NCBI RefSeq assembly: GCF_035594765.1
Contig: NC_085842.1
Span: forward strand, 206,781,747 to 206,845,746
Length of the DNA: 64,000 nucleotides
Reading direction: 5' to 3'
DNA from: Anolis carolinensis
Taxonomy: Eukaryota
Shown: one piece after another, positions 1 through 54,316 of the stretch
Layout: the number at the start of each line of letters is the position of its first letter
Position numbering within the stretch: the first letter of the stretch is position 1
The notes under the pieces: generated by a model
The model's database searches: none
Told to the model about the DNA's origin: nothing
The model's input: the letters and a program-made list of their open reading frames with translations, nothing else
Program-made: the position numbers and the translations under genes

Positions 1-162
1 AAAGTCTGGGCCAGCTTGGCTCTGTGATTGTGTGTCTATCCATGAGAATGACTCTTTATAGTGATCCAGGGCTCCTAAAACAAGGGTATTGTAGAAGTGG
101 AGCACTGTATGTCTGAGACCCTCTCTCTCCTCAGTTTGTCCCAATCCTTTTCTACGTTGCAG

Positions 163-309
163 AGTGGCTACAATTTGGCGGTGATGAATGTGGGGGCACC
201 AGCAGCTGGCATGAATGCAGCCGTGAGGTCTACTGTTAGAATCGGATTGATCCATGGCCACAGGATGCTGGCTGTGCATGATGGGTTTGAAGGCCTTGCT
301 GAAGGAAAG
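163..309 (+). CDS. PFKM: ATP-dependent 6-phosphofructokinase, muscle type; internal coding exon (gene begins upstream of window)
   Basis: ttgcAG|...AAG|GTaatt; encodes [49 protein letters not shown], the start of the PFK C-terminal regulatory half. Confidence 0.95.
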
Positions 310-1363
310 GTAATTCCATCCATTCATTGATTTATTCATTTTACAAAGAAAGTTTCTTTCTTTCACAATAGTTGTGCTGTTGTTTGGCAGAGTCATGTTT
401 TCTGCATTGCCATTCTCAAACAGCTGCTTGGTTATGTTTCACAGAAATGCACCGTGATGCTGCAGTTATTTGTACTGAATATGAATCTGGGAAGGCAGGT
501 AGCTAAGCTAGTCTATTGCAATGAAGACAGACAACAGAGAGTATTTTGACTAACACGTTTTACTTAGCATCAGCTTTCACAAATGCCAGTCCACTTATTC
601 AGATGCCTGGAATGTTGCCTTTCTTGGAAGAAATTGTGTCTGTAGACACACCTGGAACTCCGAAGAACACCCCAGTTGTCAAAAGTGGGCCATCGTGAAT
701 GAAAAGTTATGCCCGTGAAGAGATTGTCTCCAGTCCACAGGCCAAATTCAGTCTACTAGGTTCCCTCATTTGTGTTTTCCAAATTGCCCCTCTCCCATCC
801 TGAAGCGCCATGTCTTCTCAAAAGAGGAGATGAGGCTTCCAGAACTGATTTAGCTTTCCCTTTCCCTTTCTCTGGCTGAGAAAGTAAAGGGAAAATCCAT
901 TGCATGAAGGTTACAGTTTGAGAGCTGGCTGACTCCTAGATGAAGTCTGAGCAGTTATTTAGCATTTAACAGCTGCTTTCGAGAAAGAAATGTGAAGTAT
1001 AAATAAATATAATAGTAACAACAACTAGGCAGAAGTTCAGACAGTCTGGCTTTTAAACTCCATGCTGTTGCAATAGATATTTCCAATTTTGAGGCAGCAG
1101 CGGAGCTATGTCCACAAGCTGTAGTGCTATGGGGAAATGGGGAGTTGCTTGCCAAAAGGGCTATTAGATACTTCCTTGTGCTTTAGTGCAGCCAGGACAT
1201 ATACTGGTGTGATGCCCCAAAGGGATTGCAGTCCAGGACTCAGCTGGTTCCCAAAGAATAGACAGAATATTCCTGGGAAGTTAAGCAGTGGGAGCCAATC
1301 CTATTCAGTCAACTCCTAAAGTGCTAGCTTTCCCACATGGAAAAAGCAAAGGGAAGACAAATA

Positions 1364-1836
1364 TGTTGTTGAAGGCTTTCATGGCCAGAATGAATGGGTA
1401 GCTGTGATAAGTGCAGATCTGAGGAAGTGGTTGCCAATTTTTTTTTTCCGGTTTTTGTTTTTCCATACCATAGGAAACATTCCCTCTTGATGTTTCACCC
1501 ACATCTATGACAGGCATCCTCAGAGATTGTGAGGTCTGTTGGAAACTAGGCAAGTGGGGTTTATACATATACTGTGGAAGGTCCAGTGTGGGAGAAAGAA
1601 CTATTTTCTGCTTGAGGCAAGTTTGAATGGTGCAGTAGGCCACCTTAATTGGCATTGAATGGCCTTGCAGCTTCAAAGGCATTCCACAGAAGGACCTTCC
1701 ACAGATATATAAACCCCACTTGCCTAGTTTCCAACAGACCCCACAACCTCTGAGGATGCCTGCCATAGATGTAGGTGAAACATCAGGAGAGAATGCTTCT
1801 GGAACATGGTCATACAGCCTGGAAAACTCACAGCAA
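1364..1836. mobile_element. Penelope-like element 3' end / pseudo-LTR, two fragments in inverted orientation
   Basis: Same repeat as 5661-6318 and 52704-53170, where it is attached to GIY-YIG-type coding remnants; orientation switches near 1681. Confidence 0.8.
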
Positions 1837-2110
1837 TCTGGAAAACAAATACATCAGGAGTCATTGCATCCTCTTGGTATTGGAAATATGGTTAAGGCCT
1901 CTACATCTTCTTGCCAAGATAGGAACTGGGAAAGAACCAGCCTGCCAATGCAATCTGGTTCTACATCCTTGTGTCATGCCATTGCAAATGTGTTCATTTT
2001 GAGGGTATCACAGGGGTTTTTGTTGTTTTTGCTGTGACAGATTTGCCTTTAGGAAACTGAGCCTTTCCCCTAATCAGCCTGCCCCTATCATCCAATCACT
2101 CTTTTTCTAG

Positions 2111-2181
2111 GTTGAAGAAATTGGATGGAGTGGAGTTGGTGGCTGGACTGGAAGGGGTGGATCAAGCCTTGGAACGAAAAG
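2111..2181 (+). CDS. PFKM: PFKM coding exon
   Basis: tttctAG|VEEIGWSGVGGWTGRGGSSLGTK(R)|GTattg; phase matches neighbouring exons. Confidence 0.95.
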
Positions 2182-2789
2182 GTATTGAGACGGAGGACAG
2201 AGAAATGATTAAGGACATAGAAATGTTGGAAGTCACATGTAACTCTGTGTTAGGGCTATTTTTTAAAGCAAATACTTTATAAACTTATGTATAAGCCTAG
2301 AAATTTTAGTCACAAAAGGTGCCAAAAAAAAACAAAAACGGGTCAACTCATCCAAGATTCAATGTGAGTACAGTAGCTTAAATCTGAATTTTTTAAAAAA
2401 GACCACCACCACCCCTTCTGCAGTCTATGCAGGGATGGAGATGCTCCTTTTTAAAATGGAAGATCATACTGTACCATAACATTTGAAAAGGTGGCAGCAG
2501 TGTAGCTGGCCCCTTGAAGTAGCACTGACATGATCCACTCTTTGTGGAGTGACCATAGACTTATCCATGGGTCTATAGTTTTGGCCCCAAAACCTGCCAT
2601 CAACTTATACATAAGGTTGACTTTTACAGCAACCCCAAAGTAGCTGAAACTCCAAGTTAGCATGATTTTCTAACTTTGAAGGCTTGTGTATAATCATAAT
2701 CTGTTCTGATTCACAGCGGAATTAGCCCCAGTGGAGCCTTATTTGAAAGAATTAATCTAGATGAGTGTCATTGAAGAAAAGCATCAGAG

Positions 2790-3162
2790 AGAGAACAAGC
2801 CCTATTAGGAGTGGCTTAAAGAGCTGGGCATGTTTAGCCTACAGAAGAGAAAATGGAGAAGAGACATGATGAGGGCCATGTATAAATATGTGAGGGGAAG
2901 TCATAGGGAGGAGGGAACAAGCTTGTTTTCTGATGCCCTGGAGACTAGGACGCAGAACAATGGCTTCAAACTACAGGAAAGGAGATTCCATGTGAACATT
3001 AGGAAGAACTTTGGAGTGTGGTGGAGGCTCCTTCTTTGGAGGCTTTTAATCAGAGTCTGGATGGCCATCTGTCGGGGGTGCTTCGAATGCGATTTTCCTG
3101 CCTCTTGTCAGGAGGTTGGGACTGGATGGCCCGTGAGGTCTCTTCCAACTCTATGATTCTAT
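2790..3162 (+). mobile_element. CR1 LINE 3' end with internal deletion
   Basis: LKELGMFSLQKR...TRTQNNGFKLQERRF; tail tcttccaactctatgattctatg. Confidence 0.9.
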
Positions 3163-3385
3163 GGTCTCCTTAAAAGCACAGGCTATATCAGGAATGAACT
3201 GTGTCTTTCAGATCATGAACTGAAGCAGCTGAAAACACCCAAATTTCCAAGAGAACATTGACTGGAAGCAGATTAGAAATCGTAGGATCATGTTGTGGAT
3301 GCGCCAATATTAGGGTTTTCTGTAAGACGTCAAACAAAGAAAGGGGTGCCATTGATTTTCTCTGGTGATTTTTATTCACTCACAG

Positions 3386-3473
3386 GACACTGCCCAAGAA
3401 ATACTTTGAGGAAATCAGCAACACAATTGCCAATTTTAATATTCATGGCCTGATCGTCATTGGTGGCTTTGAG
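3386..3473 (+). CDS. PFKM: PFKM coding exon
   Basis: cacAG|[29 protein letters not shown]|GTatgt. Confidence 0.95.
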
Positions 3474-4033
3474 GTATGTCTCAAGCAATTATGGACAAAA
3501 CGTAAAGGAATAAATAAAGAAGTCAGTCATTCTTCACTTATAGTATTAACAACATGATGCATGAATGTGCAAGTTTTCAAGCTCCACAAAACTTCTTTCC
3601 CAGGCAGCGTGTGCTAATTTTTGGCTGTGGATCAGAAGAAGCAGGGGTGGGAATTGTGCAACCCATTTGCTTTATGAGACTTTTTATGGTGGTATGTGAA
3701 AATTACAGCATTCTCTCCCGCTCCCCACTTAATAAATTATCCCCAAACACACATTAAAAAGACCACAAACATTAAAAAACAAAACCAGGAAATGATCAGA
3801 ACATGTTTTTGGTTGTAGGAAATGGTGAAGTGTACTCTGTGGGATGAATAAAAGCCACCTAGTCTACACTAATACACTAAAAAGAAGTCAGTGGCCCCAA
3901 TTCAAACCAAGCCCGGTTTCAGTATTGATATTGTGATGCCACAGGTCACCAAAAAAGATTCTGATCTTTCTTTCAAAAAGTTGATGTGAAGGTGCCCTCC
4001 AAACAATCCCTTGGTCTCTTTTCATTTCTTTAG

Positions 4034-4186
4034 GCTTTCACTGGCAGCCTGGAATTGATTGAAGGCCGAGCCAAGTTTGAAGAGCTCTGCATCCCAATCT
4101 GTGTGATCCCTGCCACCGTCTCTAACAACATTCCTGGCTCTGACTTCAGCATTGGGGCAGACACAGCCCTCAACACCATCACGTCG
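4034..4186 (+). CDS. PFKM: PFKM coding exon
   Basis: tttAG|[51 protein letters not shown]|GTaaga. Confidence 0.96.
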
Positions 4187-4473
4187 GTAAGAGCTTCACT
4201 GAAAGAGCCTCATTTTCCAGAGGACCATCTGCGGAGACTGCTTGAGTGTTCTGCACGACAGAAAGGGGTTGGGCTGGATGGTTCTGGTGGTCTTTTGCAA
4301 TTCTAGGATTCTATGAGTCTTGAATGACACCCTGATACAAATGTCAACATTAGAAGAAGTGATAATACCAGGAGAAAGCTAAAATTAAGGACAGTGTTTC
4401 AGTTCCTTACACAATCTCTTATATTTCTGACAACTAGCAGGAGTTGGAGACCCATAACCTCACCAATACTGGC

Positions 4474-4704
4474 TTGTTGTATGTTTTCCAAGCTTTATGA
4501 CCATGTTCCAGAAGTATTCTCTACTGACGTTTTGCCCACATCTGTGGCAGGCATCCTCAGAGGTGGTGAGGTACCTCACCACCTCTGAGGATGCCTGCCA
4601 TAGATGTGGGCAAAACGTCAGGAGAGAATGCTTCTGGAACACGGCCATACAGCCCAGAAAACATACAACAACCCTGTGATCCTGGCCATGAAAGTCTTCA
4701 ACAA
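4474..4704. mobile_element. Penelope-derived fold-back inverted repeat
   Basis: Arms 4474-4572 and 4573-4671 are reverse complements with no spacer, centred on GGTACC. Confidence 0.85.
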
Positions 4705-4970
4705 GTCATCAATACTGTCATCCCACTACTAGTGCAAATTTAATTCAGTACTGATGTTGTGTTCAGAGTTGTTGTAACCCAAGCAGCCAGTCTTCTGCAT
4801 CACTCCATGCATAGGCTGGTCCTTCAGCTGTGGACATGCTATTTGCAAACCATGGGCATGCTTTACATTTATCTCCTCTTGAAGGGATCCTAGAGGAATG
4901 CTCCCCATACAGTCTTCTTTGTGTTGTTGTTCTTTAGTCTTCATTCAGAGAGGTGGCCGTCTTTCTGTGA

Positions 4971-5210
<240 letters not shown>

Positions 5211-5314
5211 TAAAAAGGATTATCTGATCCACAGAGTGTAGGGGGATGCAACCTCCCAGACCCAGAGAAAACCTGTGGCTCAATGGTGGAGAAGAGATGA
5301 GGCATAGAATAGAG

Positions 5315-5450
5315 CAGTGGTTCTCAACCTGTGGGTCCCCAGATGTTTTGGTCTTCAACTTCCAGAAATCCTAATAGCTGATAAACTGGCTTGGGATTTC
5401 TGGGAGTTGTAGAGTAAAACACTTGGGGGGCCACAGGTTGAGAACCACTG
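5315..5450. mobile_element. Same hAT MITE family
   Basis: Same TIRs and body; TSD not clear. Confidence 0.85.
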
Positions 5451-5660
5451 GCATCTTTAAGTACGCCTTGAAAAGCCCTTGTTGAGAACCCCAGAAAGCT
5501 GCTATCCACAGACTAAGCAAGGGAACAATGTGGTAAACTGCAACTCCTATTAGCCTTAGCTGATGAGACCATGGGAGCTGCAATCCAACACCTGAAAGGA
5601 TCCTTCATCCCCCACCTGCAGATAATACAAAACTAAGTGAACAATAAAGTATTACACAAC

Positions 5661-6318
5661 TGGGTTGCTGGTGAGTTTTCCGGGCTGTATGGCCATGTTC
5701 CAGAAGCATCCTCTCCTGACGTTTCGCCTGTATCTATAGCAGGCATCCTCAGAGGTTGTGAGATCTGTTGAAAACTAAACAAGTGGGGTTTATATATCTG
5801 TGGAAGGTTCAGGGTAGGAGAAAGAACTCTTGTCTGTTTGTAGCAATTGGCCACCTTGATTAGCATTGAATGGCCTTGCAGCTTCAAAGACTGCCTGCTT
5901 CCTGCTTGGGGGAATCCTTTGTTTGGAGGTGTTAGCTGGCCCTGATTGTTTCATGTCTGGAATTTCTCTGTTTTCTGAGTGTTGTTCTTCATTTACTGTC
6001 GTGATTTAACAGTTTTTTAATACTGGTAGCCAGATTTTGTGCATTTTCATGGTTTCCTCCTTTCTGTTAAAATTGTCCACATGCTTGTGGATTTCAGTGG
6101 CTTCTCTGTGTAGTCTGACATGGTAGTTGTTAGAATCCTCCTAACAAAGGATTCCCCCAGGCAGTAATCACTCTTTGAAGCTGCAAGGCCATTCAATGCT
6201 AATCAAGGTGGTCAATTGCTACATTAACATTTGCCTCAATCAGACAAGAGGTCTTTCTCCCATCCTGGACTTTCCACAGATATATAAACCCCTTTCCTGG
6301 TTTTCAACAGACCTCACA
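5661..6318. mobile_element. Penelope-like element fragment (minus) with inverted partial copy (plus)
   Basis: Minus strand encodes the ...HREATEIHKHVDNFNRKEETMK... endonuclease tail; orientation flips near 6135. Confidence 0.8.
5715..5755 (-). ncRNA. Minimal type-I hammerhead ribozyme motif (Penelope-associated), intact core
   Basis: Minus strand: CCU CUGAGGA U GCCUG cuauagaua CAGGC GAAA CG UC AGG; stem I CCU/AGG, stem II GCCUG/CAGGC, palindromic ACGU stem III. Confidence 0.75.
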
Positions 6319-6580
6319 GTCTTAATGTTAACATCATAGGCTTCAGTGCAATGTTCCAGCCTTCCTTCTTGCCCAAACTACTAATAATCTTGGTACTAAC
6401 TAACATGTCTTTCCATGCAGAAGACATAACGTAACCACCCGGAAAACGTCAGGGGCTTTAAATGTTATGGCAGAATCTATATCAGAGATTATTTTTATAG
6501 TTGTGCATAGACACATTCTCCCTGCTTCCTTGCATATGAATTCGCAGAAACGATGTTATTTTTCTTTGGACTTTTAACAG

Positions 6581-6642
6581 TTAAATGTGTCACATCTGAC
6601 TGAAAAAATGAAGACCACAGTGAAGAGAGGTCTGATATTGAG
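6581..6642 (+). CDS. PFKM: PFKM coding exon
   Basis: aacAG|LNVSHLTEKMKTTVKRGLIL(R)|GTacct. Confidence 0.93.
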
Positions 6643-7257
6643 GTACCTGGTACTATTTATCAGCTATTAATAGAAAGGGATTTGAGGCTTATGAAGTATT
6701 TCCTTTTTCTTACAAGGATGAAGAAAGACTGAATGTTTTCTGTCCCTCTATATGACTCCACAGACTTCAAGGACACTTCACAGCTCTATATAATAATAGC
6801 ATTTCAGAATGAAAAGTAAATGGAGAGTTACTAACCTCGAGATCCTTTCCTTGCAATGGAATTGTTCATTTCTGGGTTGGGGTTTTTTTTTCATCACATG
6901 GAGGCTGTCTCCTCCATTTCTACAAAAGCATTTGTGTAGGCTAAATAGGAGTCATTTAAGGTTAACTTCACAACAGCCCTTTCAGGTTGTAAAATGATGT
7001 TTGTCAAAGCTTATTAATGATCAAAATCAAAATATAGCCAGATCAGGAGCAGGTATTGGGAGCAATGAGATATTTTTTTTGTAAATAGTAAGATATAAAA
7101 ACAAGTTAAACTCTAGGGCCAAGAAACTATGTGAAATTCCTTTCCAGTTCCAAATATGGCAGCCACCTAGAAAAACAGCAAGAATTGTCTTAGTGCTATG
7201 TCACATCAAATCCACATTATTCTTTCTTATTTGACCTAATTTGCCACAGTACATTAA

Positions 7258-8961
<1,704 letters not shown>

Positions 8962-9098
8962 ATAATAATAATAGTAGTAGTAGTAGTTTTATAAATGAGG
9001 GGAAAGAGTTGAATTGCAATACAAGACAAGTTAACCAAGAGAAAAATCCCGGAGGGAGTGGCTCTCTAACTAGACACACAAGCCTTCGTTGTTTAGGG

Positions 9099-9233
9099 CA
9101 GTGGTTCTCAACCTGTGAGTCCCCAGGTGTGTTGGCCTACAACTCCCAGAAATCCCAGCCAGATTACCAGCTGTTAGGATTTTTGGGAGTTGAAGGCCAA
9201 AACATCTGGGGACCCACAGGTTGAGAACCACTG
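9099..9233. mobile_element. 135-bp palindromic hAT MITE (SPIN-like TIR)
   Basis: CAGTGGTTCTCAACCT...AGGTTGAGAACCACTG; TSD GTTTAGGG. Confidence 0.9.
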
Positions 9234-9381
9234 GTTTAGGGTGTTTTAGTGTAGCAAAAAGCTGATTCACTGCTATGTGAACATTGTCTGGGTTTGTCTG
9301 TTTTCTACTAGAGAAGAAGGCTGAAAGCTTCTGCTTCCTCATAATGTCCAAATTGTGGCGTATTTAAACCATTGTCTATGA

Positions 9382-16440: not shown

Positions 16441-17070
16441 TCACTTAAGCAGCACATATTCTTTCAGCGATTCAGGCAAAGGCAGTTCCTTCACGGCATC
16501 TGGCAGGAATTGCACTCCCAGGCTGTGGCGCACTGCATACCGTGACAGCGTCTTTAAGGTGCCTGGGGCAGAGCAGAGCGTGGTCAGTTTCTCACACAGC
16601 TGCTGATCCCGCAGGACTTCCCGGGGCATGGCCCCGTTCTTACGCAATTCAAAGTGTCCAACCGCTTGGTGGAGGAGGTCAAAGCAGGAGTCTTCCCTCT
16701 CAGTGCCAAGTCCTCTGACCAGGAGGGCAACCACCCTCGATATTGGGGTCTGCCCTTTCAGGTTGACCACCCGGACCTCAGCCCCATATTCCAGAAGGAT
16801 GCTCACGCTTTCTAGGTTCCCCTTCATTGCTGCCCAGCTCAGGGGGGTGTCATTGTTGTAATCCAGAGCATTGACAAAGGCACCACTTTCTAAGAGTGTT
16901 CGGACGCATTCAGCATTGTTCTTAAAGGCGGCCCAGTGGAGGGGTGTGTCCTTGTTGCCATCCAAGGCATTTGGATTTGCCCCGTATTCTAAGAGGATTT
17001 CCACACAGGTCTCATCCTTCTCTGCCGCATAATGGAGAGCTGTTCGGTTGTACCCATCAAGGGCATTGAC
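16441..17070 (-). CDS. ASB8: Ankyrin repeat and SOCS box protein 8, last coding exon
   Basis: ttgcAG|VNALDGYNRTALHYAAEKDE... ankyrin repeats followed by SOCS box (PGTLKTLSRYAVRHSLG...LPLPESLKEYVLLK*). Confidence 0.96.
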   Translation of the reverse strand, partial: VNALDGYNRTALHYAAEKDETCVEILLEYGANPNALDGNKDTPLHWAAFKNNAECVRTLLESGAFVNALDYNNDTPLSWAAMKGNLESVSILLEYGAEVRVVNLKGQTPISRVVALLVRGLGTEREDSCFDLLHQAVGHFELRKNGAMPREVLRDQQLCEKLTTLCSAPGTLKTLSRYAVRHSLGVQFLPDAVKELPLPESLKEYVLLK

Positions 17071-17810
17071 CTGCAAAAACAGAAAGGAGATGTTTCAGCA
17101 TTCGAATGTAAGGCCGTTTGAGCATCTGCAGGGGGTGGGTGGGGGTAAATGTTCAACCCAACCTGTCAATTGTACCAACATGCCTAACACACGCAGAGGT
17201 GTCATGGTGCTGCATATAGTTTGGAATTTTAGCTGATTGTTTATCTTTTTTTTAAAAAGGAGTTGGCTGCTATTATTACATGGGGTACTTGAGAGAGCCA
17301 TTTGGTGAAAAATCCTGTGGAAAAAAATTACATATTGGCAGATTCTACATTATGGGCCACATGCACCCAGAGGGCCACATTTTGTCTATGCCTGATTTCA
17401 ATGCCTTTGCAGGGGGGGATGTTTTTGGATACCCACTCTTCCAATACACAAGGTCTGAATACAGTACTGAAAATTTCTGCTGAAAACTGACACTGAAAGT
17501 ACAACCTTCATCTTCCCAATGCCGATGCTGCTGAAAATTTTCAGCTGGACTAAGGACAAGGAGGGAATGGGGGACATTAAAAGCCTCTGCAAAAATGGGG
17601 CTTGTTTATCAGAATCTTTGTTAAATGAGGTACGTCTGTCCAGTAAAGAGAAATAATGAGTGCGGAAGTACTTTAGTTCAGTTGTAATACAAAAGTATGA
17701 CTACACATGAAAAATGTCAATTAATCTATCATATGGTAAAAAAGATTTTAAGAATATGAATGTGATAGAAACCAAAGCTGAAAAAGCATCTATCAACATC
17801 AGTGTTAATA

Positions 17811-23870: not shown

Positions 23871-24168
23871 GGAATCTTGGGCAAACCATGTTATCTCAGC
23901 CTCAGAGAAAGGCAAACCCACTCCAAACAAACCTTGCCAAGAAAACCCTGTGATAGGTTGTTGTTTTTAAATTGTAAATTATACAATGTAAAAAGTTACA
24001 AAACATAAATAGTAAATTGGAATTAAATATTACAATTTTAAAATACTGATCAAGACAAGTGAAAACTGTTAAAAACCATTCCTAACTGCATGGGAAAGGC
24101 AACCGGGGGGGGGGGGGAGGGTTGTCTTTGAGAGGGTGGTGGGACTTATGAGAAGCTGCACTTTAGGG

Positions 24169-24303
24169 CAGTGGTTCCCAATCTTTGCGCCTCCAGGTGT
24201 TTTGGACTTCAGCTCCCACAATTTTTAACATCTGGCAAGCTGACTGGGATTTCTGGGAGTTGAAGTCCAAAACACCCGGAGGATCAAAAGTAGGGAACCA
24301 CTG
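24169..24303. mobile_element. Related hAT MITE
   Basis: CAGTGGTTCCC...GGGAACCACTG; TSD CTTTAGGG. Confidence 0.85.
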
Positions 24304-25174
24304 CTTTAGGGTGCTTTATCACACTAGAGCTGAAAAAGTAGGCAAAGAGTATGAATCCCATCTGAAATTCTGTGGCTGCGTCCTGCAGAATTCTGGGGCT
24401 TGTAGTTTAGTGAGACCCAGGATCTCTCTGGCTGAGCATTTAAAGGCCCTTTCCCTAAACTAAAAGCCCCAGAATTCTGCAGGAGGCAGCCACAGGGTTT
24501 CAGATGGAATGCGTATTCTTTGAGCTCTGATGTGATACAGTGTTGGTTTCCATGAGTCAAAAAGTGCTTGAAAGTATACCACAACTATGTTTTATTAAAG
24601 GTCAACCTGACTGTGTAATGAGTATGCACTGAATTTCTTCAGAACTCATGTTATTAATATCCAATCTGTTCTGTGGACTTTGAAAGCAGGCTCACATCAC
24701 CTGCATAACATTTCAATATCAGTTTTTTATTTCAGTATGCTGGGCAATTAGCTTATTTGTTGCATATATAAAAATGTTTATTATCAACACTGTTTTCTGA
24801 ATAGCCACTATGCTTTAAAAACACACACAGTCCCATATTTAAGCATTAGCTCAATTACCAGAGTCAACAAGGAATTCCACACAAGTGAAAAAGCTGGCAA
24901 AGGAAAGAGAAGTCCTCCTACGCTGAGCACAGAAATACAGCAGGAATTGATGTTACAGGAGAGAGGGATCTCTTTGTTTTTCCTCAGCCAGATTCCATTA
25001 GGCTGGTGATTCAGGGGGAGGGCAGAGTTGCAGCACTTACTTTCAAGGTACAATTTAGTTTTAACCAAAGTGGTATTCCTTGCCTGAGAAAATCCCATGA
25101 AGCACCAATATAATCATACTCATAGAATAAAAGAGTTGGAAAAGATAATGTGGGCAATCTAGTCCCAACTGCAC

Positions 25175-27046: not shown

Positions 27047-27366
27047 GGTAAAAAGGTAAAGGTTTTCCCCTGACGTTAAGTCCAGTCATGTATGACTCTG
27101 GGGGTTAGTGCTCATCTCTATTTCTAAGCCGAAGAGCCGGCGTTGTCCGTAGACACCTCCAAGGTCATGTGGCCAGCATGACTGCATGGAGCACCGTTAC
27201 CTTCCCGCCGGAGCGGTACCTATTGATTTACTCACATTGGCATGTTTTCGAACTGCTAGGTTGGCAGAAGCTGGAGCTAACAGTGGGCGCTCACTCCACT
27301 CCCGGGGTTTGAACCTGGGACCTTTCGGTCTCCAGCTCAGTGCTTTAATGCACTTCACCACCGGGG
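27047..27366 (-). mobile_element. Sauria SINE
   Basis: tRNA-like head, AAATGGAGATGAGCAC body, (ACCTTT)n tail. Confidence 0.9.
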
Positions 27367-28304: not shown

Positions 28305-28690
28305 TGTGTTGTCAAAGGCTTTCATGCCTGGTTTTTCATGGCCGGAATCACTGGGTTGCTGTGCGTTGTTCAAGTTGTATGGCCCTGTTCCAGCAGCATT
28401 CCCTCCTGACGTTTCGCCTGCATCTGTGAGGATTGTTGGAAATAAGGCTAGTGGAGTGTATACATATTTGGAATGTCCAAGATGGGAGAAAGAACCCTTG
28501 TCTGTTTGAAGCCAGTGTGAATGTTGCAGTTAGCAAGATTGATTAGCATTTAGTAACCTTGCAGCTGCAAATGCAATCAGTGGGGGGCTGTTATTTACTT
28601 AATACTTTGTTCAACTTGATTGTTTGCTGTCTGGAATTCCCTTCTTTCTGTGTGGCGTTCTTTATTTACTATCTCGATTCTTGCATTTAC
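28305..28690 (-). mobile_element. Penelope-like fragment, divergent, with internal deletion through the hammerhead
   Basis: tgttgtcaaaggctttcatg...cctgacgtttcgcctgcatctgtg matches the other Penelope ends. Confidence 0.7.
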
Positions 28691-30115
28691 ATTCATTAAC
28701 ATGAATAACGTAAATATATAAAACATAAATAAAGGTAACAGGTATTTTCCATCCTTTGGTATGCTAGAAAGTGAGAAACTACCTTGCCTAAGTAGACATC
28801 AAAAGCGAAGTATGCACCATTCATGAAGAATAAAGGAAACCTGGCCAGTAATCAGAAGTATTAGTGACCTTGCAATATATTTCACATTTATAATTTATTG
28901 TCTTGCCTCCAATTTTTGAAAACGCCTATTGCGCCCGGCTATTGGTTGTTGTTGAGCGTATGCTTTTATGATTTTTCTATGTTTTTCTGTATTAATTCAC
29001 TGTAATTGAATATATCTTATATTGTTGTATTTTATTGTTGTATTACTCGGCTTGGTCTCCATGTAAGCCACCCCAAGACCCTTCGGGGAGATGGAGGTGG
29101 GATATAAGAATAAAGTTATTATTGTTGTTATTATTATTATTGTTATTATTATTATTATTATTATTAATGTTTTATTCATAGAATAATAGCAGAGCACCCC
29201 TGTGAGATCAGAAGAAAGAACCAGAAAGTCCATCACCTTGCTTCTCTTAGAGGCCCTTCCACACAGCCCTATATCCCAGAATATCAAAGCAGAAAATCCC
29301 ACAATATCTGTTTTGAACTGGTTTATCTGAGTCCACACTGCCATATATCCCAGTTCAAAGCAGATAATATGAGATTTTATTCAGCTGTGTGGAAGGGGCC
29401 TCAGTGACACCTAGGGCAAGTCACACTTTCTCAGCCTCAGAGGAAGACAAAGGTAAAGGCAAACAAATCCTCCTCTGAACAAATCTTGCCAAGGAAATCC
29501 TGTGGTTGTAAATCACCTGAAGGCACAAAACAACCACAAATGCATATAGTGGTGGGCAAGACCACAGCCAGAACAATTTTTTGGGGGAGGGGGGTTGAAA
29601 CTTTTTTTAGCGAATAATGAAGAGTAGTTGCATAATGCAAAATAATTTAGAAATCGGACTCCATCAATAAACTTCAGTGGACACTTAAGACAGATAAACT
29701 TCAGTGAACGCTCATAATAATTTGGTTAATCAGTTAAAATTCATGAGTAAACCAAATTTTTAAGGAAAAAACTGAAAAATTGGGGGGGGGGTGAACCCCT
29801 ACCCCCCCCCCCCCCCTTCCCAGCTACAGCCCTGGTTGTGAGACAAGAGTTCATTCCACATTAGCGGATGGTTACTGTTCTGGCTATTGCAGAGTATCTC
29901 CACCAGCTTTTTCTCCTCCAATAGCTTGCTTTTTGTCAAAGAGGACAAAATCCTCCAAACAACCTTATAGCATAGGCTAGGCAGAGGCCCCTTCTACACT
30001 GCCATATAAAATCCAGATGATCTGTTTTGAACTGGATTATATGGCAGTGTAGGTTCATATATTCCAATTCAAAGCAGATAATCTGCATTTTATATGGCAG
30101 TGTAGAAGAGGACTA

Positions 30116-30442
30116 GGAGCCCCGGTGGCACAGTGTGTTAAAGCACTGAGCTGCTGAACTTGCAGACCGAAAGGTCGCAGGTTCAAATCCCGGGAGCAGA
30201 GTGAGTGCCCGGTGTTAGCTCCAGCTTCTGACAACCAGCCGTTCAAAAACATGCCAATGTGAGTAGATCAATAGGTACCGCTCCGGCAGGAAGGTAATGG
30301 TGCTCCATGCAGTCATGCTGACCACATGACTTTGGAGGTGTCCACGGACAACGCCGGCTCTTCGGCTTAGAAATGGAGATGAGCATCAGCCCCCAGAGTC
30401 AGACATGACTGGACTTAACATCAGGGGAAACCTTTACCTTTA
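30116..30442 (+). mobile_element. Sauria SINE inserted at the end of a Harbinger-type MITE
   Basis: ggagccccggtggcacagtg...aacctttaccttta; flanking tagaagagg duplication. Confidence 0.9.
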
Positions 30443-31028: not shown

Positions 31029-32120
31029 TGCCTATGTATGTGCGCTTCTAGACACTTCCAGGAAAGCGTGCTAAAGATAGCTCGCCTGAACCATAGAGCG
31101 AGCAGTTCCTCTGCTTTCCTAGCGATCAGCAGGAAATGCAACAGAGGCAGGAGGAGGAGGAGGGATAGGGGATTAAATTAAACTGGGACCTTCCTGTTCC
31201 CAGCAGCCCCTTGAGCCAAGAGTTGTGAGAATCGTCGCCTGTTATCCTTTCGTTTCCGCCCGGCCTCCATCCCAAAGGCAAGTGAGTTTTAATGCATTGC
31301 CTGCAGAAAGGGATTTTTTTTTTGGAGGTGGGGGGATCTGGACTGCAAGAGCAGAAGGTTTGTTTATCTTTGGATATTGCCCAGCTTTGGAAAATAATGG
31401 GCAACATGGCTTTGCTTCCCTTTGATCCTTTGGAAAATATTATGCATGGCTTTGAGAGGATCAGATCTTGCTACTGTCACCTTTGTGGAGACAAGGACTC
31501 CCCCTCGCTCCTCCTCTTTCCATCACTGCCTCTCTCTCTCTCTCTCTCTGATCTTGCAATTGTTGCAGAATTTTGGGAATTGCTAAAATTTGGAAGCGAT
31601 CTGGGTCTCTGCTTCTCCCTCCCCCCACCTGCTTGCCCCAAATGACATTGCTGGGTCCCAAGATGGCCACCCCGAGATAGAGAGCAAGCTGTCATTTAAA
31701 AGTTGCTTCTTCTAGGAGAGAGAAGATGATGTGGTCCCTTATCCCTAAAGTCAGGGGTTGAACAGTGTTCAGACTCAGGAGGGCTGGTTTGGAAAAGTTC
31801 AAAAATGAAATGTCTATATAGACTTTAAAATGAGTCCTGTGCATGCCTATTCAAAGGTAGTCCCTATTGAATACAAGCTTTGTGGATAGCGTTGCAACAT
31901 ATTTGTGGCTTACGGTGCATCTGCACTGCAGAATTAATGCAGTTTGACAGCACGAACTGCTGTGGCTCAGTGTTGTGGGATCCTGGGAGTTATAGTTTGG
32001 TGAGGCATTAGGACTATTAAAAACTTTATAAAGCTACAACTCTGATAGTTCCATAATCTTGAACCATGGCAGTTAAAGTGGTGTCAAACTGCATTAATTC
32101 CACAGTGTTAATGCACCTAT

Positions 32121-32452
32121 GGAGCCCCCGGTGGCACAGTGGGTTAAACCTCTGAGCTGCTGGACTTGCTGACCGAAAGGTTGGCAGTTCGAATTTGTGG
32201 AGCAGGGTGAGCTCCTGCTGTTAGCCCCAGCTTCTGCCATCCTAGCAGTTGGAAATCATGCAAATGTGAGTAGATCAATAGGTACCACTTAGGCAGGAAG
32301 GTAACCGCTCCATACAGTCATGTCGGCCACATGACCTTGGAGGTGTCTACAATACAACACTGGCTCTTCGGCTTAGAAATGGAAATGAGCCCCACTACCC
32401 AGAGCCGGACACGACTAGACTTAATGTCAGGGGAAAACCTTTAGCTTTTACC
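32121..32452 (+). mobile_element. Sauria SINE
   Basis: Same consensus; flanked by a tgcacctat duplication. Confidence 0.88.
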
Positions 32453-32888: not shown

Positions 32889-32926
32889 TTAACACTTGTA
32901 TATTAGCTGTACATATGTATGTTGGG

Positions 32927-33256
32927 TGGAGCCCCTGGTGGCGCAGCGGATTAAATTGCTGAGCTGCTGAACTTGCTGACCAAAAGGTCGCCAGTTTGAA
33001 TCAGGGGAGCAGGATGATCTACTGCCGTTAGCCCCAGCTTCTGCCAACCTAGCAGTTTGAAAACATGCAAATATGAGTAGATCAATAGGTACCTGTCCGG
33101 TGGGAAGGTAACGGCGCTCTGTGCAGTCATGCCAGCCAATGACCTTGAAGGTGTCTACAGACAACGCCGGCTCTTCATCTTAGAAATGGAGATGAGCACC
33201 ATCCCTCAGAGTCAGACATGACTAGACTTAATGTCAAGGGAAAACCTTTACCTTTA
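32927..33256 (+). mobile_element. Sauria SINE
   Basis: Same consensus; TSD tatgttgggt. Confidence 0.9.
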
Positions 33257-33261
33257 TATAT

Positions 33262-34556
33262 GTTGGGTGCCTTCAAGTCATTTCTGATTTACAGCAACCC
33301 TATCGCAGGGATTTCTTGGTCGAATTTGTTCAGAGCAGGTTTACTTCTTTCTAGGCTGAGAGTATGACTTGCCCAAAGTCACCCAATGTGGTTTCCTTGG
33401 CCAAGCATGAATATGAACCCTTGTTTTCCAGTATTCTAGTCCAACACCCAAACCACTACATCACAGAGTGTCTTTAATCCAGTGTTTTTCAACCTGTGGG
33501 TCCCAAAAGTTTTGGCCTTCAACTCTCAGAAATCCTAACAGCTGGTAAACTGACTGGGATTTCTGGGAGTTGTAGGCCAAAACACCTGGGGACCCACAGG
33601 TTGGCAATCACTGCTTTAAGCAATTGGTTGATCAATTTCCACATGAGAAAGGCGATCCTTTGAAGGTGGAGGAAGTATAGTATTTTTATAGGAATTATGT
33701 ATGTAGGAAGGATTCAGATAGCATAGTGGCAACACCGCCAATGGAAATAGAGCCATGTAGCAGGTGATGGAAAAGAGCCTTCTGCTTATGAGAAGTTACT
33801 AGCAGTCAGAACAGGTTTTATTATCCTATGTTTTTACTCATCTGAGGCTCAATGGATTGAGTTCCTTTGTGTCTTCCAAGTTGTTTCCTATCACAGATTT
33901 TCTTGGGAAGATATGTTCAGGAGAGACGGAACCTTGTCCAAGGTCACCCAATGGGTGTCCATGTCTGAATGTGATGTCACAGTAGACTCTGTAATTGTAG
34001 TCCAACGTTCAAACCATTGCACCACGCTGGCTCGAAATACAAATGGCACCCAGGGATCTGAGAGTCCTGCTAGAAAAGGAATGAGTGTCTGACCACAATG
34101 TCAACTTCATCTGTTTCCTTCATGTTCCATGTTCCTTCCCATAGCACATTCTCAGAGGTAGCTGTGTTGAGTATGCAGCAAAATACAACAGAATTCAAAA
34201 TTCATAAACTCAAATGCCTTTACTGGGCTACCTCAAGAATTGGCAATTGGTAGTGGTTTCTTTTTGGATGTAAAAGTGGAGTGTGAAAGCTTTGTATAGA
34301 AAGACACTTGTCATCTGCATTTTATATTTGCTGGCTAAGGCTGTTGTGTATTGCAGTCCAATAATCTTGAAATTATATTCAATCTTGTGTGCTTTCAAGT
34401 TGTTTAGATTTACGGCAACCCTATTACAGGTCTTTCTGAAGCCGAGTGTGTGTGACTCGCTCAAGGTCACGCAGTGGGTTTCCATGGCCTGTGGAATCAA
34501 AGTGTTGATCTAAAGTGTTGTAGTCGAACACTCAAACCACTACACTGTACTGGCTC
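33262..34556 (-). mobile_element. Cluster of three old tRNA/CORE-like SINE copies (33262-33465, ~33860-34032, ~34385-34556)
   Basis: Repeated tgccttcaagt...gacttgcccaaggtcacccaatgggt...tagtccaacactcaaaccactacac; related pieces at ~13200, ~23880 and ~29400. Confidence 0.65.
33480..33613. mobile_element. Same hAT MITE family
   Basis: Degenerate TIRs; TSD CTTTAATC/CTTTAAGC. Confidence 0.8.
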
Positions 34557-41535: not shown

Positions 41536-41670
41536 CAGTGGGTCTCAACCTGTTGGTCCCCAGATATTTTGGCCTTCAACTCCCAGTAATCCCAACAGCT
41601 GGTAAACTGGCTGGGATTTCTGGGAGTTGTAGGCCAAAACACCTGGGGACCCACAGGTTGAGAACCACTG
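41536..41670. mobile_element. Same hAT MITE family
   Basis: TSD CCCTAGGG/CCCTAGAG. Confidence 0.88.
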
Positions 41671-45599: not shown

Positions 45600-46797
45600 C
45601 TACAAAAGAAAAAACACAGTTATTTTGCACAAGAGGAACTTTCTAAAACTAGCCTAACTCCTGACTGAAATCTTTTTAAAAAGGTTTCAAGTGATGCTAA
45701 AGCTTAGTTCAGCATAATACACCAAGTACTTCTTATAACAAAATTTAAATGATGGGTCATGTGGACTATTTCTGAGTTCCTTCTAAACAACTTTGATGAG
45801 AGTGTGTATTCTATTCCTCTTTTGTGGAACAAAACTAAGGAGAGGAGAAAGAAGAACATAAGTATATGACTCCAACATCTTCCAATCACAGCTTCCTGAA
45901 TCTAGAGTTTATCATAACCCAAAACCAGGTGAACAGAAGTTCTTCCTCAGCCCCCATCATACAACTGAATTGTTTCAGTAGACCGCTGAAAGTCACAAGT
46001 AAGCCCAGAAATGTTTATGCATTTTTCATATATGCAATCACTGAACAGATGGAGTAGTTTCACTCAAAGATAGAGAAGCAAAATAATCAAGATAACAAGT
46101 GGAGTAGAGGACAAGCTCAAGCTTCACCTTTGTCTCAAAATTAGAGACTTCAGGCTGAAACCTATTAACCCCTCATGTGGGGGCAAGATCAATTAAATTA
46201 AATAGCATTTACTTCTGTGCAGACATGTGCAGTATAAATATTATTTTGCATCTCTCGAAATCACATTAGCTTGTACTGGTATTCGCATATTTAGTACTAT
46301 GCGCAGTCATCCAAGTGACATTATTCTGTATAAGGAAAGAAATGCACAGATTAGTAGAAGATGTTGGCCAGACCACAAAATTCATTACTCAAAAGAAAAA
46401 TCTAGGGAAAATCAAGTGCTGTTCTATCATCTATGCTTTAACCAGAACAATTCTGGATAACTGAATAATCTGAAACATAAAGTCCACCACTTTCAGAATT
46501 TTAAATCGTAGGATCTTGACATATTACTGCTTGTTAAATGACATGTTTTATATTGGATTGCTGTGAGTTTTTCAGGCTGTAGGGCCATGTTCTAGTAGCA
46601 TTCTCTCTAGCTGATTAGAAAGATGGTTAGAATTTACATCTGTCCTCACTCACTTTTTAAAAGGCACATCAATTGTTCCTATTACATCTACTTACTAAAA
46701 AGTGTGTCCATTGAATTCATTGATTCTTGCTGGCTTTACTTTCATAGCTCATTCTGAGGAGAATAGCATATATATTTGAACAACACACAGTACTTGC

Positions 46798-51049: not shown

Positions 51050-51330
51050 GGCCCAGCTCTGGAATTCCTTTATCTTCTAAGTGTTGTTCTTTATTTACTG
51101 TCCTGATTTTAGAGGTTTTAATACTGGAAGCCAGATTTTGTAGATTTGCATGGTTTCCTCCTTTCTGTTGAAATTGTCCACATGCTTGTGGATTTCAATG
51201 GCTTTTTCGTATAGCCTGACGTGGTTGTGAGAGTGGTCCAGCATTTCTGTGTTCTCAAATAATATGCTGTGTCCAGGTTGGTTCATCAAGTGCTCTGCTA
51301 TGGCTGATTTCTCTGACCTGGACACAGCAT
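51050..51330 (-). mobile_element. Penelope-like GIY-YIG endonuclease C-terminal fragment
   Basis: ORF 51095-51325: KSAIAEHLMNQPGHSILFENTEMLDH...EKAIEIHKHVDNFNRKEE. Confidence 0.8.
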
Positions 51331-52703: not shown

Positions 52704-53170
52704 TTAAAGCCATAGAGAAGCCACTGAAATCAACAAGCATGTGGACCATTTCAACAGAAAGGAGGAAACCATGAAAATGAACAAAATCTGGCTACCACTA
52801 TTTAAAAACTCTAAAATCAGGACAGTAAATAAAGAACAACACTCAGAAAACAGGGGAATTCCAGACAGAAAATAATCGGGGCCAGGTAACACCTCCCAAC
52901 ACCTTCCCCCAGGAAGGAAGCAGCCAGGCTATGAAACTGAAATGCCATTCAGTGCTAATCAAGGTGATTAATTGCAACCTTCACACTTGCCAATGGACAA
53001 GAGTTCTTTCTTCCACCTTCCTGGACCTTTCACAGATATATAAACCCCACTTGCCTAGTTTCCAACAGACCTCACAACCTCTGAGGATGCCTGCCATAGA
53101 GGTGGGCAAAACATCAGGAGAGAATGCTTCTAGAACATGGCCATACAGCCCAGAAAACTCACAGCAACCC
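52704..53170 (+). mobile_element. Penelope-like 3' fragment with degenerate hammerhead (53078-53118)
   Basis: REATEINKHVDHFNRKEETMKMNKIWLP followed by the pseudo-LTR repeat. Confidence 0.8.
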
Positions 53171-54316
53171 AATATCATTAATAGATTTGTGCATGAACCA
53201 AAGCTTGTGTACATTGAATTGTCAGAAAGGAAAGTAAACGAAAGCCTCTGTTCTATGACACTAATATGATCTTGTCGATTGTTGGCTTCTGGGGCTTGAA
53301 TAGAGTTACATCTACTAAAAATACATGCTCCCCCTTTGGGATCAAAGAACTTGGCCATAATTCCCTTATGCTGTCTGAAAGTTACTATGAAAAGCATTTG
53401 CTGCATTGATGGTGGTCCAGAAATCTCTATGTCCACCATATACAGAACAAGGCTGATGGTATACCAAATAGGTATAAACTTGCAGATAAGACAGAATGGT
53501 TCATTATACAGACTCATGATGCACATCTGATAATTTTCAAACATGCCTTTTTTTCATGTCAGGAGCTACTTGAGAAACTGCAAGTCGCTTCTGGTGTGAG
53601 AGAATTGGCCATCTGCAAGGATGTTGCCCAGAGGATGCCTGGATGTTTGATGTTTTACCATTCTGTGGGAGGCTTTTCTCATGTCCCCACATGGACCTGG
53701 AGCTGACAGACGGGAGCTCACCCTGCTCCCCGGATTTGAATTGCTGACCTTTCGATCAGCAGTCCTGCCAGCACAAGGGTTTAATCAATTGCACCATTGG
53801 GGGCTCCTCAAACGTGCATGAAAGACAATTCTAGTGATACCTGGTTGTGGGAGGGAAGACAGTATGACCAGATGAATGGTCAAGGTGGCAACAACAACAA
53901 TAATAATAATACAAAAAATATTTATTGCCTGCTGCTCTTCGCACCATAAGGCCGTGACACTGTTAGAATATATTATAATAGAATGCATTCAATAAAATGC
54001 ATATATTAAAATATAGTTCTATAAAATACGCATATTAAAATGCATACGTCAAAGACTGACACCAGTACCAATGACATGCAAGTTAAAATTCCTCATTTAA
54101 AATTGACTAATTAGGCCTGCCAGAAGAGATGATTTAGCTGTCGGATCTCTTCTGGCAGGTTGTCCCACAGTCTTCATGACGTGACCTATGAAAAGGTCCT
54201 CTAGGTGACAGTTGCCGCTTAATAATAAGAATAAGAATAACTTTATTTTTATACCCCACCTCCATCTCCCCAAAGGGATTCAGGGCGGCTTACATGGGGC
54301 CAAGCCCGGGTAATTA

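What the first reader, a model, noticed from the sequence alone, without database searches (positions are those of the whole stretch)
5715..5755. Family of minimal hammerhead ribozymes carried by Penelope repeats; one copy has an intact catalytic core
Seen: a 41-nt motif recurs at 1486-1526(-), 1747-1787(+), 4523-4563(-), 4582-4622(+), 5715-5755(-) and 53078-53118(+), with a half copy at 28405-28428(-). The 5715 copy reads CCU-CUGAGGA-U-GCCUG..CAGGC-GAAA-CG-UC^AGG. That is the hammerhead core (CUGAnGA / GAAA / UH) with a 3-bp stem I, a stem II, and stem III reduced to the palindrome ACGU. The other copies have changes at the two CpGs of GCGAAACGTC (GTGAAACATC, GCAAAACGTC), as expected from methylation decay. 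Established: Penelope-like elements carry such minimal type-I hammerheads in their pseudo-LTRs, and these cleave mainly as dimers through the palindrome. Inference: five motifs lie in PFKM introns and one in MYG1 intron 1. The three copies sense to a host pre-mRNA are all damaged and the only fully intact one is antisense, which could reflect selection against self-cleavage of host transcripts. The sample is far too small to show this.
Basis: partly seen in the sequence, partly recalled or inferred. Interest (0 to 1): 0.8.

Follow-up and report, generated by a model that had tools for sequence, protein, structure and literature searches.

The report
Penelope retrotransposon hammerhead motifs, known kind
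The 41-letter motif is the already published minimal hammerhead ribozyme of the lizard Penelope-like retrotransposon Poseidon_Ac, scattered through gene introns as broken transposon ends; one copy has kept all its key letters, most likely by chance, so the finding is real but ordinary.

Summary
The copy at 5715-5755(-) is the only one that passes a minimal-hammerhead descriptor (0 hits in 300 simulated windows).

The majority sequence of the copies matches, letter for letter, the end-to-start junction of the published Poseidon_Ac consensus (Anolis carolinensis Penelope-like element). The element's ATG is A9, the extra U and G10.1, and the cut site lies 26 nt downstream. That ribozyme has been tested in vitro and cleaves only when the element's protein is added.

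The copies are 5'-truncated insertions. Three are head-to-head pairs, and they end at about ORF +88 or +115, the published Penelope "tail" signature.

The host-gene claims also hold: PFK introns on the + strand and MYG1 intron 1.

Every damaging change is a CpG transition. The window's CpG observed/expected ratio is 0.25. One copy in six keeping both hammerhead CpGs is expected about 60% of the time. The selection idea therefore has no support here, and paired inverted insertions weaken it further.

Rfam hammerhead models find nothing, and six copies show no covariation.

The scan holds 88 notes with the words hammerhead and Penelope; the eight shown are from this genome.

Verdict: already known, low interest.

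The parts
5715..5755 (-). Minimal type-I hammerhead motif with every defining position intact. Layout: helix I CCU/AGG, core CUGAGGA, extra U, helix II GCCUG/CAGGC with a 9-nt loop, GAAA, ACGU palindrome, C17 at 5718. The predicted cut lies between 5718 and 5717.
5659..6127 (-). 5'-truncated Poseidon-type Penelope-like insertion that carries the 5715 motif. It comprises the 3' end of the element ORF and UTR (pLTR) at 5756-6127, the hammerhead, and the first ~88 nt of the next ORF unit. That ORF starts at ATG 5746-5744 and reads MPAIDTGETSGEDASGTWPYSPEN.
   Evidence: by-eye comparison with the Poseidon_Ac consensus printed
6137..6319 (+). Inverted (head-to-head) partner arm of the 5659-6127 copy. 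It is pLTR sequence that stops at ...CCTCACAG, 7 nt before where C3 of the hammerhead core would begin, so this sense-strand arm has no hammerhead.
1474..1678 (-). Left arm of a head-to-head pair. Its hammerhead at 1486-1526 has C11.1 to U, G16.2 to A and two helix I changes. The core boxes are intact.
1692..1836 (+). Right arm of the same pair. Its hammerhead at 1747-1787 has C11.1 to U and G16.2 to A. It is sense to the PFK pre-mRNA and ends at about ORF +88.
4468..4572 (-). Left arm of a spacer-less palindrome. Its hammerhead at 4523-4563 has G12 to A and G1.3 to U. It ends at about ORF +87, without a tail.
   Evidence: (I18)
4573..4705 (+). Right arm of the palindrome. Its hammerhead at 4582-4622 has G12 to A as its only change. 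It runs on to about ORF +115, which adds the ~30-nt tail. It is closest to Poseidon_Ac itself (1 difference in 81 non-CpG positions) and is sense to PFK.
52711..53171 (+). 5'-truncated copy in MYG1 intron 1, in sense orientation. Its hammerhead at 53078-53118 has G12 to A, G16.2 to A and one change in loop 2 (U to G).
28317..28679 (-). Old copy (about 20% diverged) with a 22-nt deletion that removes the 5' half of the hammerhead. It keeps GCGAAACGUC and carries the tail.
46548..46608 (-). Tail-only fragment of about 60 nt. Its similarity to the element begins at AG(G)AGAGAAUGC, within 0-3 nt of the hammerhead cut site, and ends at about ORF +88.
   Evidence: (D15)
51058..51228 (-). Isolated fragment of the 5'-most part of the same pLTR/ORF-end sequence, without a hammerhead.
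3384..5162 (+). Host phosphofructokinase exons at about 3384-3473, 4034-4186 and 4998-5162, with the next exon from about 6581. They define the introns that hold the copies and fix the gene on the + strand.
   Evidence: spliced contig, GT..AG joints; PF00365, exon by exon

Best explanation
These are dead, 5'-truncated insertions of a Poseidon/Penelope-type retrotransposon of an anole-like lizard.

In this element the minimal hammerhead straddles the junction between the pseudo-LTR and the ORF. The start codon is A9, the extra U and G10.1, and the cut site lies 26 nt into the ORF. Reverse transcription starts inside the next ORF unit, at about +88 or +115, and runs back through the hammerhead. 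So nearly every insertion longer than about 100 nt carries one motif, and head-to-head insertions carry two in opposite orientation.

In the parent element the motif is a weak ribozyme. It has no stem III hairpin, needs a partner copy (the ACGU palindrome) and needs the element's protein. Its role in transposition is still unclear.

In these host introns the copies are relics decaying neutrally, mainly by deamination of the two methylated CpGs that lie inside GGCGAAACGUC. The copy at 5715 has kept both CpGs, most likely by chance. I expect little or no cleavage from it as a lone antisense-strand monomer.

Shown here: identity with the published element, the anatomy of the insertions, their positions in host genes and the decay pattern. 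Inferred: neutrality and lack of activity in place.
For: - The majority 41-mer of the six copies equals the last 9 nt plus the first 32 nt of the Poseidon_Ac consensus printed in File S1 of PMC11167929.
- The ORF start and the 26-nt distance to the cut site match that paper's description. Translation from 5746(-) gives MPAIDTGETSGEDASGTWPYSPEN, against the published MPAIDVGETSGENASGTWPHSPKD.
- The copies share 3' ends at about +88 (5715, 1747, 53078, 4523 and the 46548 fragment) or about +115 (4582 and 28405). This fits the reported start of reverse transcription at 111-118 and the optional 30-40 bp tail, which is often present at one end only.
- There are three head-to-head pairs in 6.5 kb. 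This arrangement is described for Penelope-like elements and fits the cleavage and extension of both DNA strands seen in vitro.
- All core-region changes are CpG transitions. CpG retention is 8 of 21, and the window's CpG o/e is 0.25.
- In the nearest-neighbour energy model the double-hammerhead fold scores -15.1 kcal/mol against -27.0 for two monomers at their minimum free energy. This agrees with the published weak, protein-assisted activity.
Against: - No Rfam hammerhead model scores the motif, even at E<=10.
- The six copies show no compensatory changes, and pairing is no better than in column shuffles. Within this window the structural reading therefore rests on identity to a published ribozyme and on a descriptor match, not on covariation.
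- No cleavage data exist for this variant of helix II (GCCUG/CAGGC, which differs from the published GCCUGC/GUGGGC at four positions).
- All sequencing runs were available only as contigs, so neither antisense transcription nor RNA ends at 5718 could be examined.
- The 5715 copy keeps 3 of 3 ancestral CpGs although it differs at 8% of non-CpG positions. That is mildly unusual, and could mean a separate source subfamily or local low methylation.
Confidence: 0.87

Rival explanations
1. Orientation-dependent purifying selection. Intact hammerheads on the sense strand of introns cut host pre-mRNAs and are removed or survive only when mutated. Intact copies would then persist mainly antisense.
For: The three sense copies (1747, 4582, 53078) are damaged and the fully intact copy is antisense. 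The sense-strand partner arm of the 5715 copy lacks the hammerhead altogether. A 2026 preprint reports that Penelope-derived retrozymes are depleted from Xenopus introns relative to intergenic DNA.
Against: - With six copies the pattern is what chance gives: about 60% for at least one intact copy, then 50% for its orientation.
- The antisense copies 1486 and 4523 are just as damaged, by the same CpG transitions.
- Head-to-head pairs fix one copy in each orientation per insertion.
- The published ribozyme does not cleave without the element's protein, and no RNA-seq reads end at its cut site.
- The preprint did not analyse orientation.
Confidence: 0.07
2. The 5715 copy is a working ribozyme kept for a host or element function, for example processing an antisense transcript of the PFK locus, or it comes from a still-active subfamily whose helix II variant is functional.
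For: All defining positions are intact. In helix II the two wobble pairs of the consensus (U-G and G-U) are Watson-Crick pairs (U-A and G-C) in this copy. All three ancestral CpGs are kept.
Against: - The copy is 5'-truncated, has no RT/EN ORF and has no same-strand intact partner. The nearest same-strand copy, 1.2 kb away, has G12 to A.
- Transitions opposite U or G keep pairing automatically, so the helix II changes are not evidence of selection.
- No antisense transcript is shown.
Confidence: 0.04
3. A chance resemblance to a hammerhead inside an unrelated repeat.
For: Rfam hammerhead models do not score it, and the local copies show no covariation.
Against: There are 0 descriptor hits in 300 simulated windows and 0 pattern hits in 100 shuffles. 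The motif is identical, letter for letter, to a ribozyme whose C3G and G8C mutants lose cleavage and whose double mutant partly regains it.
Confidence: 0.02

Closest known systems
PAc hammerhead of Poseidon_Ac, the Anolis carolinensis Penelope-like element (Mob DNA 2024, PMC11167929)
   Same: The majority sequence of the window's copies is identical over the whole 41-nt motif and on into the ORF. [quoted passage not shown] The copies share the same two 3' end points, with and without the tail.
   Different: The 5715 copy differs at four positions in helix II and its loop: GCCUGCUAUAGAUACAGGC here, GCCUGCCAUAGAUGUGGGC in the published sequence. Most copies here belong to an older sister subfamily, whose tail reads CUCACAGCAACCC rather than CAUACAACAACCC and whose pLTR is very roughly four-fifths alike by eye. 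Only the palindrome at 4468-4705 looks like Poseidon_Ac proper. None of the copies has an RT/EN ORF.
Minimal hammerheads of metazoan Penelope-like elements (Cervera and de la Pena 2014, PMC4209133; Lunse, Weinberg and Breaker, RNA Biol 2017, known to me only through citation in PMC6765202)
   Same: Type-I order of the parts, no loop 3, palindromic ACGU for dimer formation, an extra nucleotide before G10.1, the G10.1-C11.1 pair, a short helix I, and a location in the pseudo-LTR. Many solitary copies, and pairs on opposite strands 100-700 bp apart, are also as described.
   Different: Helix I here has only 3 contiguous pairs, whereas 4-5 are reported for Schistosoma. A possible closing stem (CUC/GAG) lies beyond an internal loop. 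Activity of this copy has not been tested.
Double-hammerhead ribozymes of newt satellite 2 and avocado sunblotch viroid (Forster et al. 1988, cited)
   Same: Stem III is too short for a monomer. Activity is expected only when two copies pair through stem III.
   Different: Those RNAs are transcribed as tandem multimers. The copies here are solitary or inverted, with same-strand neighbours 1.2-3 kb apart.
Animal non-LTR retrozymes (PMC7229834; bioRxiv 10.64898/2026.07.22.740005)
   Same: They are derived from Penelope-type pseudo-LTRs and carry type-I hammerheads.
   Different: Retrozymes are head-to-tail tandem repeats that give circular RNAs. This window has no tandem array of the motif.

Membership tests
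Minimal type-I hammerhead of Penelope-like elements (min-HHR) | Core boxes CUGANGA, GAAA and UH in type-I order | tested here: met
   The 5715 copy reads CUGAGGA ... GAAA ... GUC. The boxes are also intact in copies 1486 and 1747. GAAA has become AAAA in 4523, 4582 and 53078.
Minimal type-I hammerhead of Penelope-like elements (min-HHR) | One unpaired nucleotide between A9 and G10.1, and a G10.1-C11.1 closing pair on a helix II of 4 bp or more | tested here: met
   U at 5745. Helix II is GCCUG/CAGGC, 5 bp with a 9-nt loop. C11.1 is lost in 1486 and 1747.
Minimal type-I hammerhead of Penelope-like elements (min-HHR) | No loop 3, with positions 15.1-16.1 forming a palindrome (ACGU) that can pair with a second copy | tested here: met
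   ACGU lies at 5722-5719. A nested double-hammerhead structure can be written and evaluated, at -15.1 kcal/mol. The palindrome is broken to ACAU in 1486, 1747 and 53078.
Minimal type-I hammerhead of Penelope-like elements (min-HHR) | A short helix I that closes the three-way junction | tested here: inconclusive
   Only 3 contiguous pairs (CCU/AGG), whereas published families have 4-5. A further CUC/GAG stem beyond an ACAA/A internal loop is possible by eye. There is no covariation to judge it by.
Minimal type-I hammerhead of Penelope-like elements (min-HHR) | Location at the pseudo-LTR/ORF junction of a Penelope-like element | tested here: met
   The motif is identical to the end plus the start of the Poseidon_Ac consensus. 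The ORF N-terminus matches.
Minimal type-I hammerhead of Penelope-like elements (min-HHR) | Site-specific self-cleavage after C17, as a dimer or with the element's protein | not testable with these tools
   This needs an in vitro assay. The consensus sequence was tested in PMC11167929, but not the 5715 variant.
Rfam hammerhead families (Hammerhead_1, _3, _II, HH9, HH10) | Covariance-model score at or above the gathering threshold | tested here: not met
   No hammerhead hit at gathering score, nor at E<=10 on 1-8000 or on the 91-nt stretch. My inference is that these models expect a stem III hairpin, which this motif lacks. I do not file the motif under an Rfam family.
5'-truncated insertion of a Poseidon/Penelope-type element | Common 3' ends inside the ORF start, with an optional 30-40 nt tail | tested here: met
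   The ends fall at about +88 and about +115.
5'-truncated insertion of a Poseidon/Penelope-type element | Variable 5' truncation, often with an adjacent inverted 5'-truncated copy | tested here: met
   Copy lengths run from 61 to about 470 nt. There are three head-to-head pairs, at 1474-1836, 4468-4705 and 5659-6319. No RT or GIY-YIG ORF of 130 aa or more occurs in the window, as expected for fragments.

The most novel reading that the evidence does not exclude
Two readings are not excluded.

(a) Genome-wide, intact Penelope hammerheads may be depleted on the sense strand of introns, because protein-assisted or dimeric cleavage damages host pre-mRNAs.

(b) Tail-only fragments such as 46548-46608(-), whose 5' end falls at the hammerhead cut site, may be cDNA copies of RNAs that were cleaved in vivo. 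If so, the genome would hold a fossil record of ribozyme activity that RNA-seq has so far failed to show.

Neither can be judged from one window.
Probability: 0.1. Interest if true: 0.5.

Novelty: already known. Interest (0 to 1): 0.15.

Why it matters
It matters little as a discovery. Minimal hammerheads in Penelope-like elements have been described since 2014, and this very sequence was characterised in 2024.

The window is a tidy textbook example. It shows why the motif is so abundant: it lies just upstream of the point where reverse transcription starts, so even very short insertions carry it. It also shows how the motif dies, through two methylated CpGs that sit on C11.1/G12 and C15.2/G16.2.

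Two cheap genome-wide tests follow from it. One is an orientation-by-integrity count in introns. The other is a look for a pile-up of 5' ends at the cut site. Either could say whether this weak ribozyme ever cuts in vivo, which the literature leaves open.

Tried and rejected
- Rfam covariance models at gathering score and at E<=10 gave no hammerhead hit. They returned only sub-threshold microRNA-like hits on the palindromes at 4505-4640 and 5315-5450, which I take to be hairpin artefacts of inverted repeats.
- Covariation among the six copies showed no change on both sides of any pair and did no better than shuffles.
- Nearest-neighbour folding does not favour the active double-hammerhead fold. 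This is uninformative for a ribozyme that depends on tertiary contacts and protein, and I report it only as consistent with weak activity.
- A metagenome scan for the motif found 0 matches. I ran no other collection scan: genome contigs holds only bacteria and archaea, so it cannot hold lizard copies.
- Sequencing runs were all held as contigs and their RNA/DNA kind is a guess. Depth over the repeats sums copies from the whole genome. Nothing can be said about antisense transcription or RNA ends. One spliced contig did give the PFK exon structure.
- Lunse et al. 2017 (PMC5785218) is not held, so I cite it only through PMC6765202.
- The Poseidon_Ac consensus exists only as printed text. I compared it by eye over short stretches and ran no machine alignment of the whole element, because it has no reference id.
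- I built no full-length consensus or mended copy of the element.
- The host exons were searched one by one by reference.
- I rejected the chance-motif reading and the idea of a conserved host function; see the rival explanations.

Full report
**Observation**

The minus strand of 5755..5715 reads CCT CTGAGGA T GCCTG ctatagata CAGGC GAAA CG TC AGG. That is the hammerhead layout in type-I order:
- the 5' strand of helix I;
- C3-A9;
- one extra U;
- a helix II hairpin closed by G10.1-C11.1;
- G12-A14;
- A15.1-C15.2-G16.2-U16.1 with no loop;
- C17;
- the 3' strand of helix I.

The pattern CTGANGA..GAAACGTC occurs once in the window and in none of 100 shuffles. I wrote a descriptor in the style of Cervera and de la Pena's RNAmotif search. 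It requires 3 or more bp in helix I, CUGANGA, an optional extra base, 4 or more bp in helix II closed by G-C, GAAA, palindromic 15.2/16.2 and UH. It finds only this site on either strand, and nothing in 300 simulated windows.

The half copy at 28405-28428 is a copy with a 22-nt deletion.

**What it is**

The 41 nt are part of a longer interspersed repeat. File S1 of PMC11167929 prints the Repbase consensus of Poseidon_Ac, the Penelope-like element of Anolis carolinensis.
- Its last letters are ...cctcacaacctctgagg. Its first are atgcctgccatagatgtgggcgaaacgtcaggagagaatgcttctggaacatggcca...
- Joined, they give the majority sequence of the window's copies letter for letter across the motif.
[quoted passage not shown] Here ATG is A9, the extra U and G10.1 (5746-5744), and C17 (5718) is the 26th base after it.
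- Translation from that ATG gives MPAIDTGETSGEDASGTWPYSPEN, against the published MPAIDVGETSGENASGTWPHSPKD.
- By eye, the sequence upstream of the motif in the 5715 copy also follows the published 3' UTR and the last codons of the ORF.

The genome is therefore an anole or a close relative (inference). The motif is a published ribozyme.

**Anatomy of the insertions**

A BLAST of 5500-6500(-) against the window and alignments of the 3' parts show the following.
- The copies have different 5' ends but shared 3' ends.
- The 3' end falls at about ORF +88 in 5715, 1747, 53078, 4523 and the 46548 fragment. It falls at about +115 in 4582 (which runs to 4705) and in 28405.
- The paper places the main start of reverse transcription 111-118 nt into the ORF. 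It equates the optional 30-40 bp "tail" with the interval between two start sites.
- Craig et al. note that the tail is often present at only one end, and that an inverted 5'-truncated copy often abuts the insertion.

All of this is seen here. There are three head-to-head pairs: 1474-1678(-) with 1692-1836(+); 4468-4572(-) with 4573-4705(+), which has no spacer and a tail on the right arm only; and 5659-6127(-) with 6137-6319(+).

This explains the abundance of the motif. It lies 60-115 nt upstream of where cDNA synthesis starts, so any insertion longer than about 100 nt carries it.

No RT or GIY-YIG ORF is present among ORFs of 130 aa or more. These copies are fragments.

Two subfamilies are visible. 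The palindrome at 4468-4705 matches Poseidon_Ac itself (tail CATACAACAACCC; 1 difference in 81 non-CpG positions in the right arm). The other copies share CTCACAGCAACCC and are 3-20% diverged.

**State of the copies**

| Copy | Changes |
|---|---|
| 4523, 4582, 53078 | G12 to A. G12 is the general base of hammerhead catalysis (established knowledge). |
| 1486, 1747 | All core boxes kept; C11.1 to U and G16.2 to A, so the palindrome is broken. |
| 53078 | Also G16.2 to A. |

Every one of these is a transition at one of the two CpGs in GGCGAAACGUC. The window's CpG observed/expected ratio is 0.25.

Over the three CpGs that are ancestral by comparison with the published consensus, the seven copies keep 8 of 21. 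I discount the ACACGG site that the script also flagged, because the published sequence has ATG there. At that retention rate a given copy keeps both hammerhead CpGs with probability about 0.15. At least one of six copies does so with probability about 0.6. The one fully intact copy therefore needs no special explanation.

**Host genes**

One run holds a spliced contig that lies on about 3384-3473, 4034-4186 and 4998-5162 and jumps on to about 6581, with GT..AG introns on the + strand. Searched one exon at a time, these exons match Pfam PFK at successive profile positions.

An ankyrin/SOCS-box ORF on the minus strand at 16441-17076 fits the ASB8 neighbour of PFKM known from human. That synteny comes from my own knowledge.

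MYG1_exonuc matches place exon 1 in 51340-51675(+) and exon 2 in 55443-55706(+). The 53078(+) copy therefore sits in MYG1 intron 1, in sense orientation.

**The selection idea**

It is not supported here, for four reasons.
- The pattern is what chance gives (see above).
- The antisense copies 1486 and 4523 are damaged in the same ways as the sense copies.
- Two of the three PFK insertions are inverted pairs, so each delivers one sense and one antisense motif whatever selection does.
- The published ribozyme does not cleave without the element's protein, its catalytic mutants do not affect insertion in vitro, and no RNA-seq reads end at its cut site. Earlier work also found very low activity, even for dimers.

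A 2026 preprint reports depletion of Penelope-derived retrozymes from Xenopus introns, but it did not examine orientation.

**How it most likely works**

In the parent element the RNA has no stem III hairpin. Two copies must pair through ACGU to build two composite active sites. This is the double-hammerhead geometry of Forster et al. 1988, as cited. In such a dimer, the core of one copy acts on the C17 of the other; that step is my inference from the geometry.

The nearest-neighbour model gives -15.1 kcal/mol for this fold, against -27.0 for two separate monomers at their minimum free energy. This is consistent with the need for protein or chaperones.

In place, the 5715 copy is on the strand antisense to PFK. 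Its nearest same-strand neighbour, 1.2 kb away, has A12 and a weakened helix I strand. I expect no meaningful cleavage there (inference).

**Limits**

- Rfam's hammerhead models do not recognise the motif at any threshold tried.
- The six copies carry no compensatory changes.
- All sequencing runs were held as contigs of uncertain kind, so transcription and RNA ends could not be read.
- The published consensus could only be compared by eye, because it has no reference id.

**Earlier notes of this scan**

A word search returned 88 notes that hold "hammerhead" and "Penelope"; the eight listed are all from this genome. Two follow-ups reached the same verdict: a published motif of an abundant lizard transposon. 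I reached the identification independently, from the paper's supplement.

**Verdict**

The kind is already known. The selection idea is untested and somewhat undermined. Interest is low.

Noticed in passing
window 46548-46608 (-): A Penelope fragment of about 60 nt. Its similarity to the element begins at AG(G)AGAGAAUGC, within 0-3 nt of the hammerhead cut site, and ends at the usual +88 point. It could be a cDNA copy of an RNA cleaved in vivo, or a chance truncation point. A genome-wide look for a pile-up of 5' ends at this base would tell.
   Followed up: partly
window 6137-6319 (+): The inverted partner arm of the 5715 copy is pLTR sequence that stops at ...CCTCACAG, 7 nt before where C3 of the hammerhead core would begin, rather than running on to the usual +88/+115 end. 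I cannot tell whether this is a later deletion or an unusual insertion end.
   Followed up: partly
window 4468-4705: A spacer-less head-to-head palindrome of two very short Poseidon_Ac ends. The left arm ends at about +87 and the right arm at about +115, so the tail is on one side only. Both arms share G12 to A, which suggests they were copied from one template. The palindrome gives sub-threshold microRNA-like Rfam hits (mir-2041, mir-1295, MIR158) that look like hairpin artefacts.
   Followed up: partly
window 5308-5451, 9086-9249, 24156-24319, 33466-33629, 41523-41686, 43454-43617, 61881-62044, 63728-63891: Eight copies of a palindromic repeat of about 150-164 bp with terminal inverted repeats (CAGTGGTTCTCAACCTGTGGG...CCCACAGGTTGAGAACCACTG). 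It looks like a MITE and gives sub-threshold mir-5408 and mir-875 Rfam hits.
   Followed up: no
window 30113-30442, 32119-32448, 32926-33255, 52110-52331, 58753-58974, 27049-27330(-): A repeat family that looks like a tRNA-derived SINE (head GGAGCCCCGGTGGCACAGTGGGTTAAA...). Several copies, in both orientations.
   Followed up: no
window 54539-54724 (+): An ORF fragment matching the Mos1/mariner transposase HTH domain (PF17906, E 1.9e-05). It is a DNA-transposon remnant in MYG1 intron 1.
   Followed up: no
window 16441-17076 (-) and 36808-37626 (+): An exon encoding ankyrin repeats plus a SOCS box (ASB-type, tail-to-tail with the PFK gene) and an ORF with multiple C2H2 zinc fingers. Another note of this scan covers the zinc-finger gene.
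   Followed up: no
window 7811-8485 (+): A 224-aa ORF with a weak zf-RVT match (E 1e-3, below the Pfam cut-off). It may be a remnant of another retroelement and is not the Penelope ORF.
   Followed up: no
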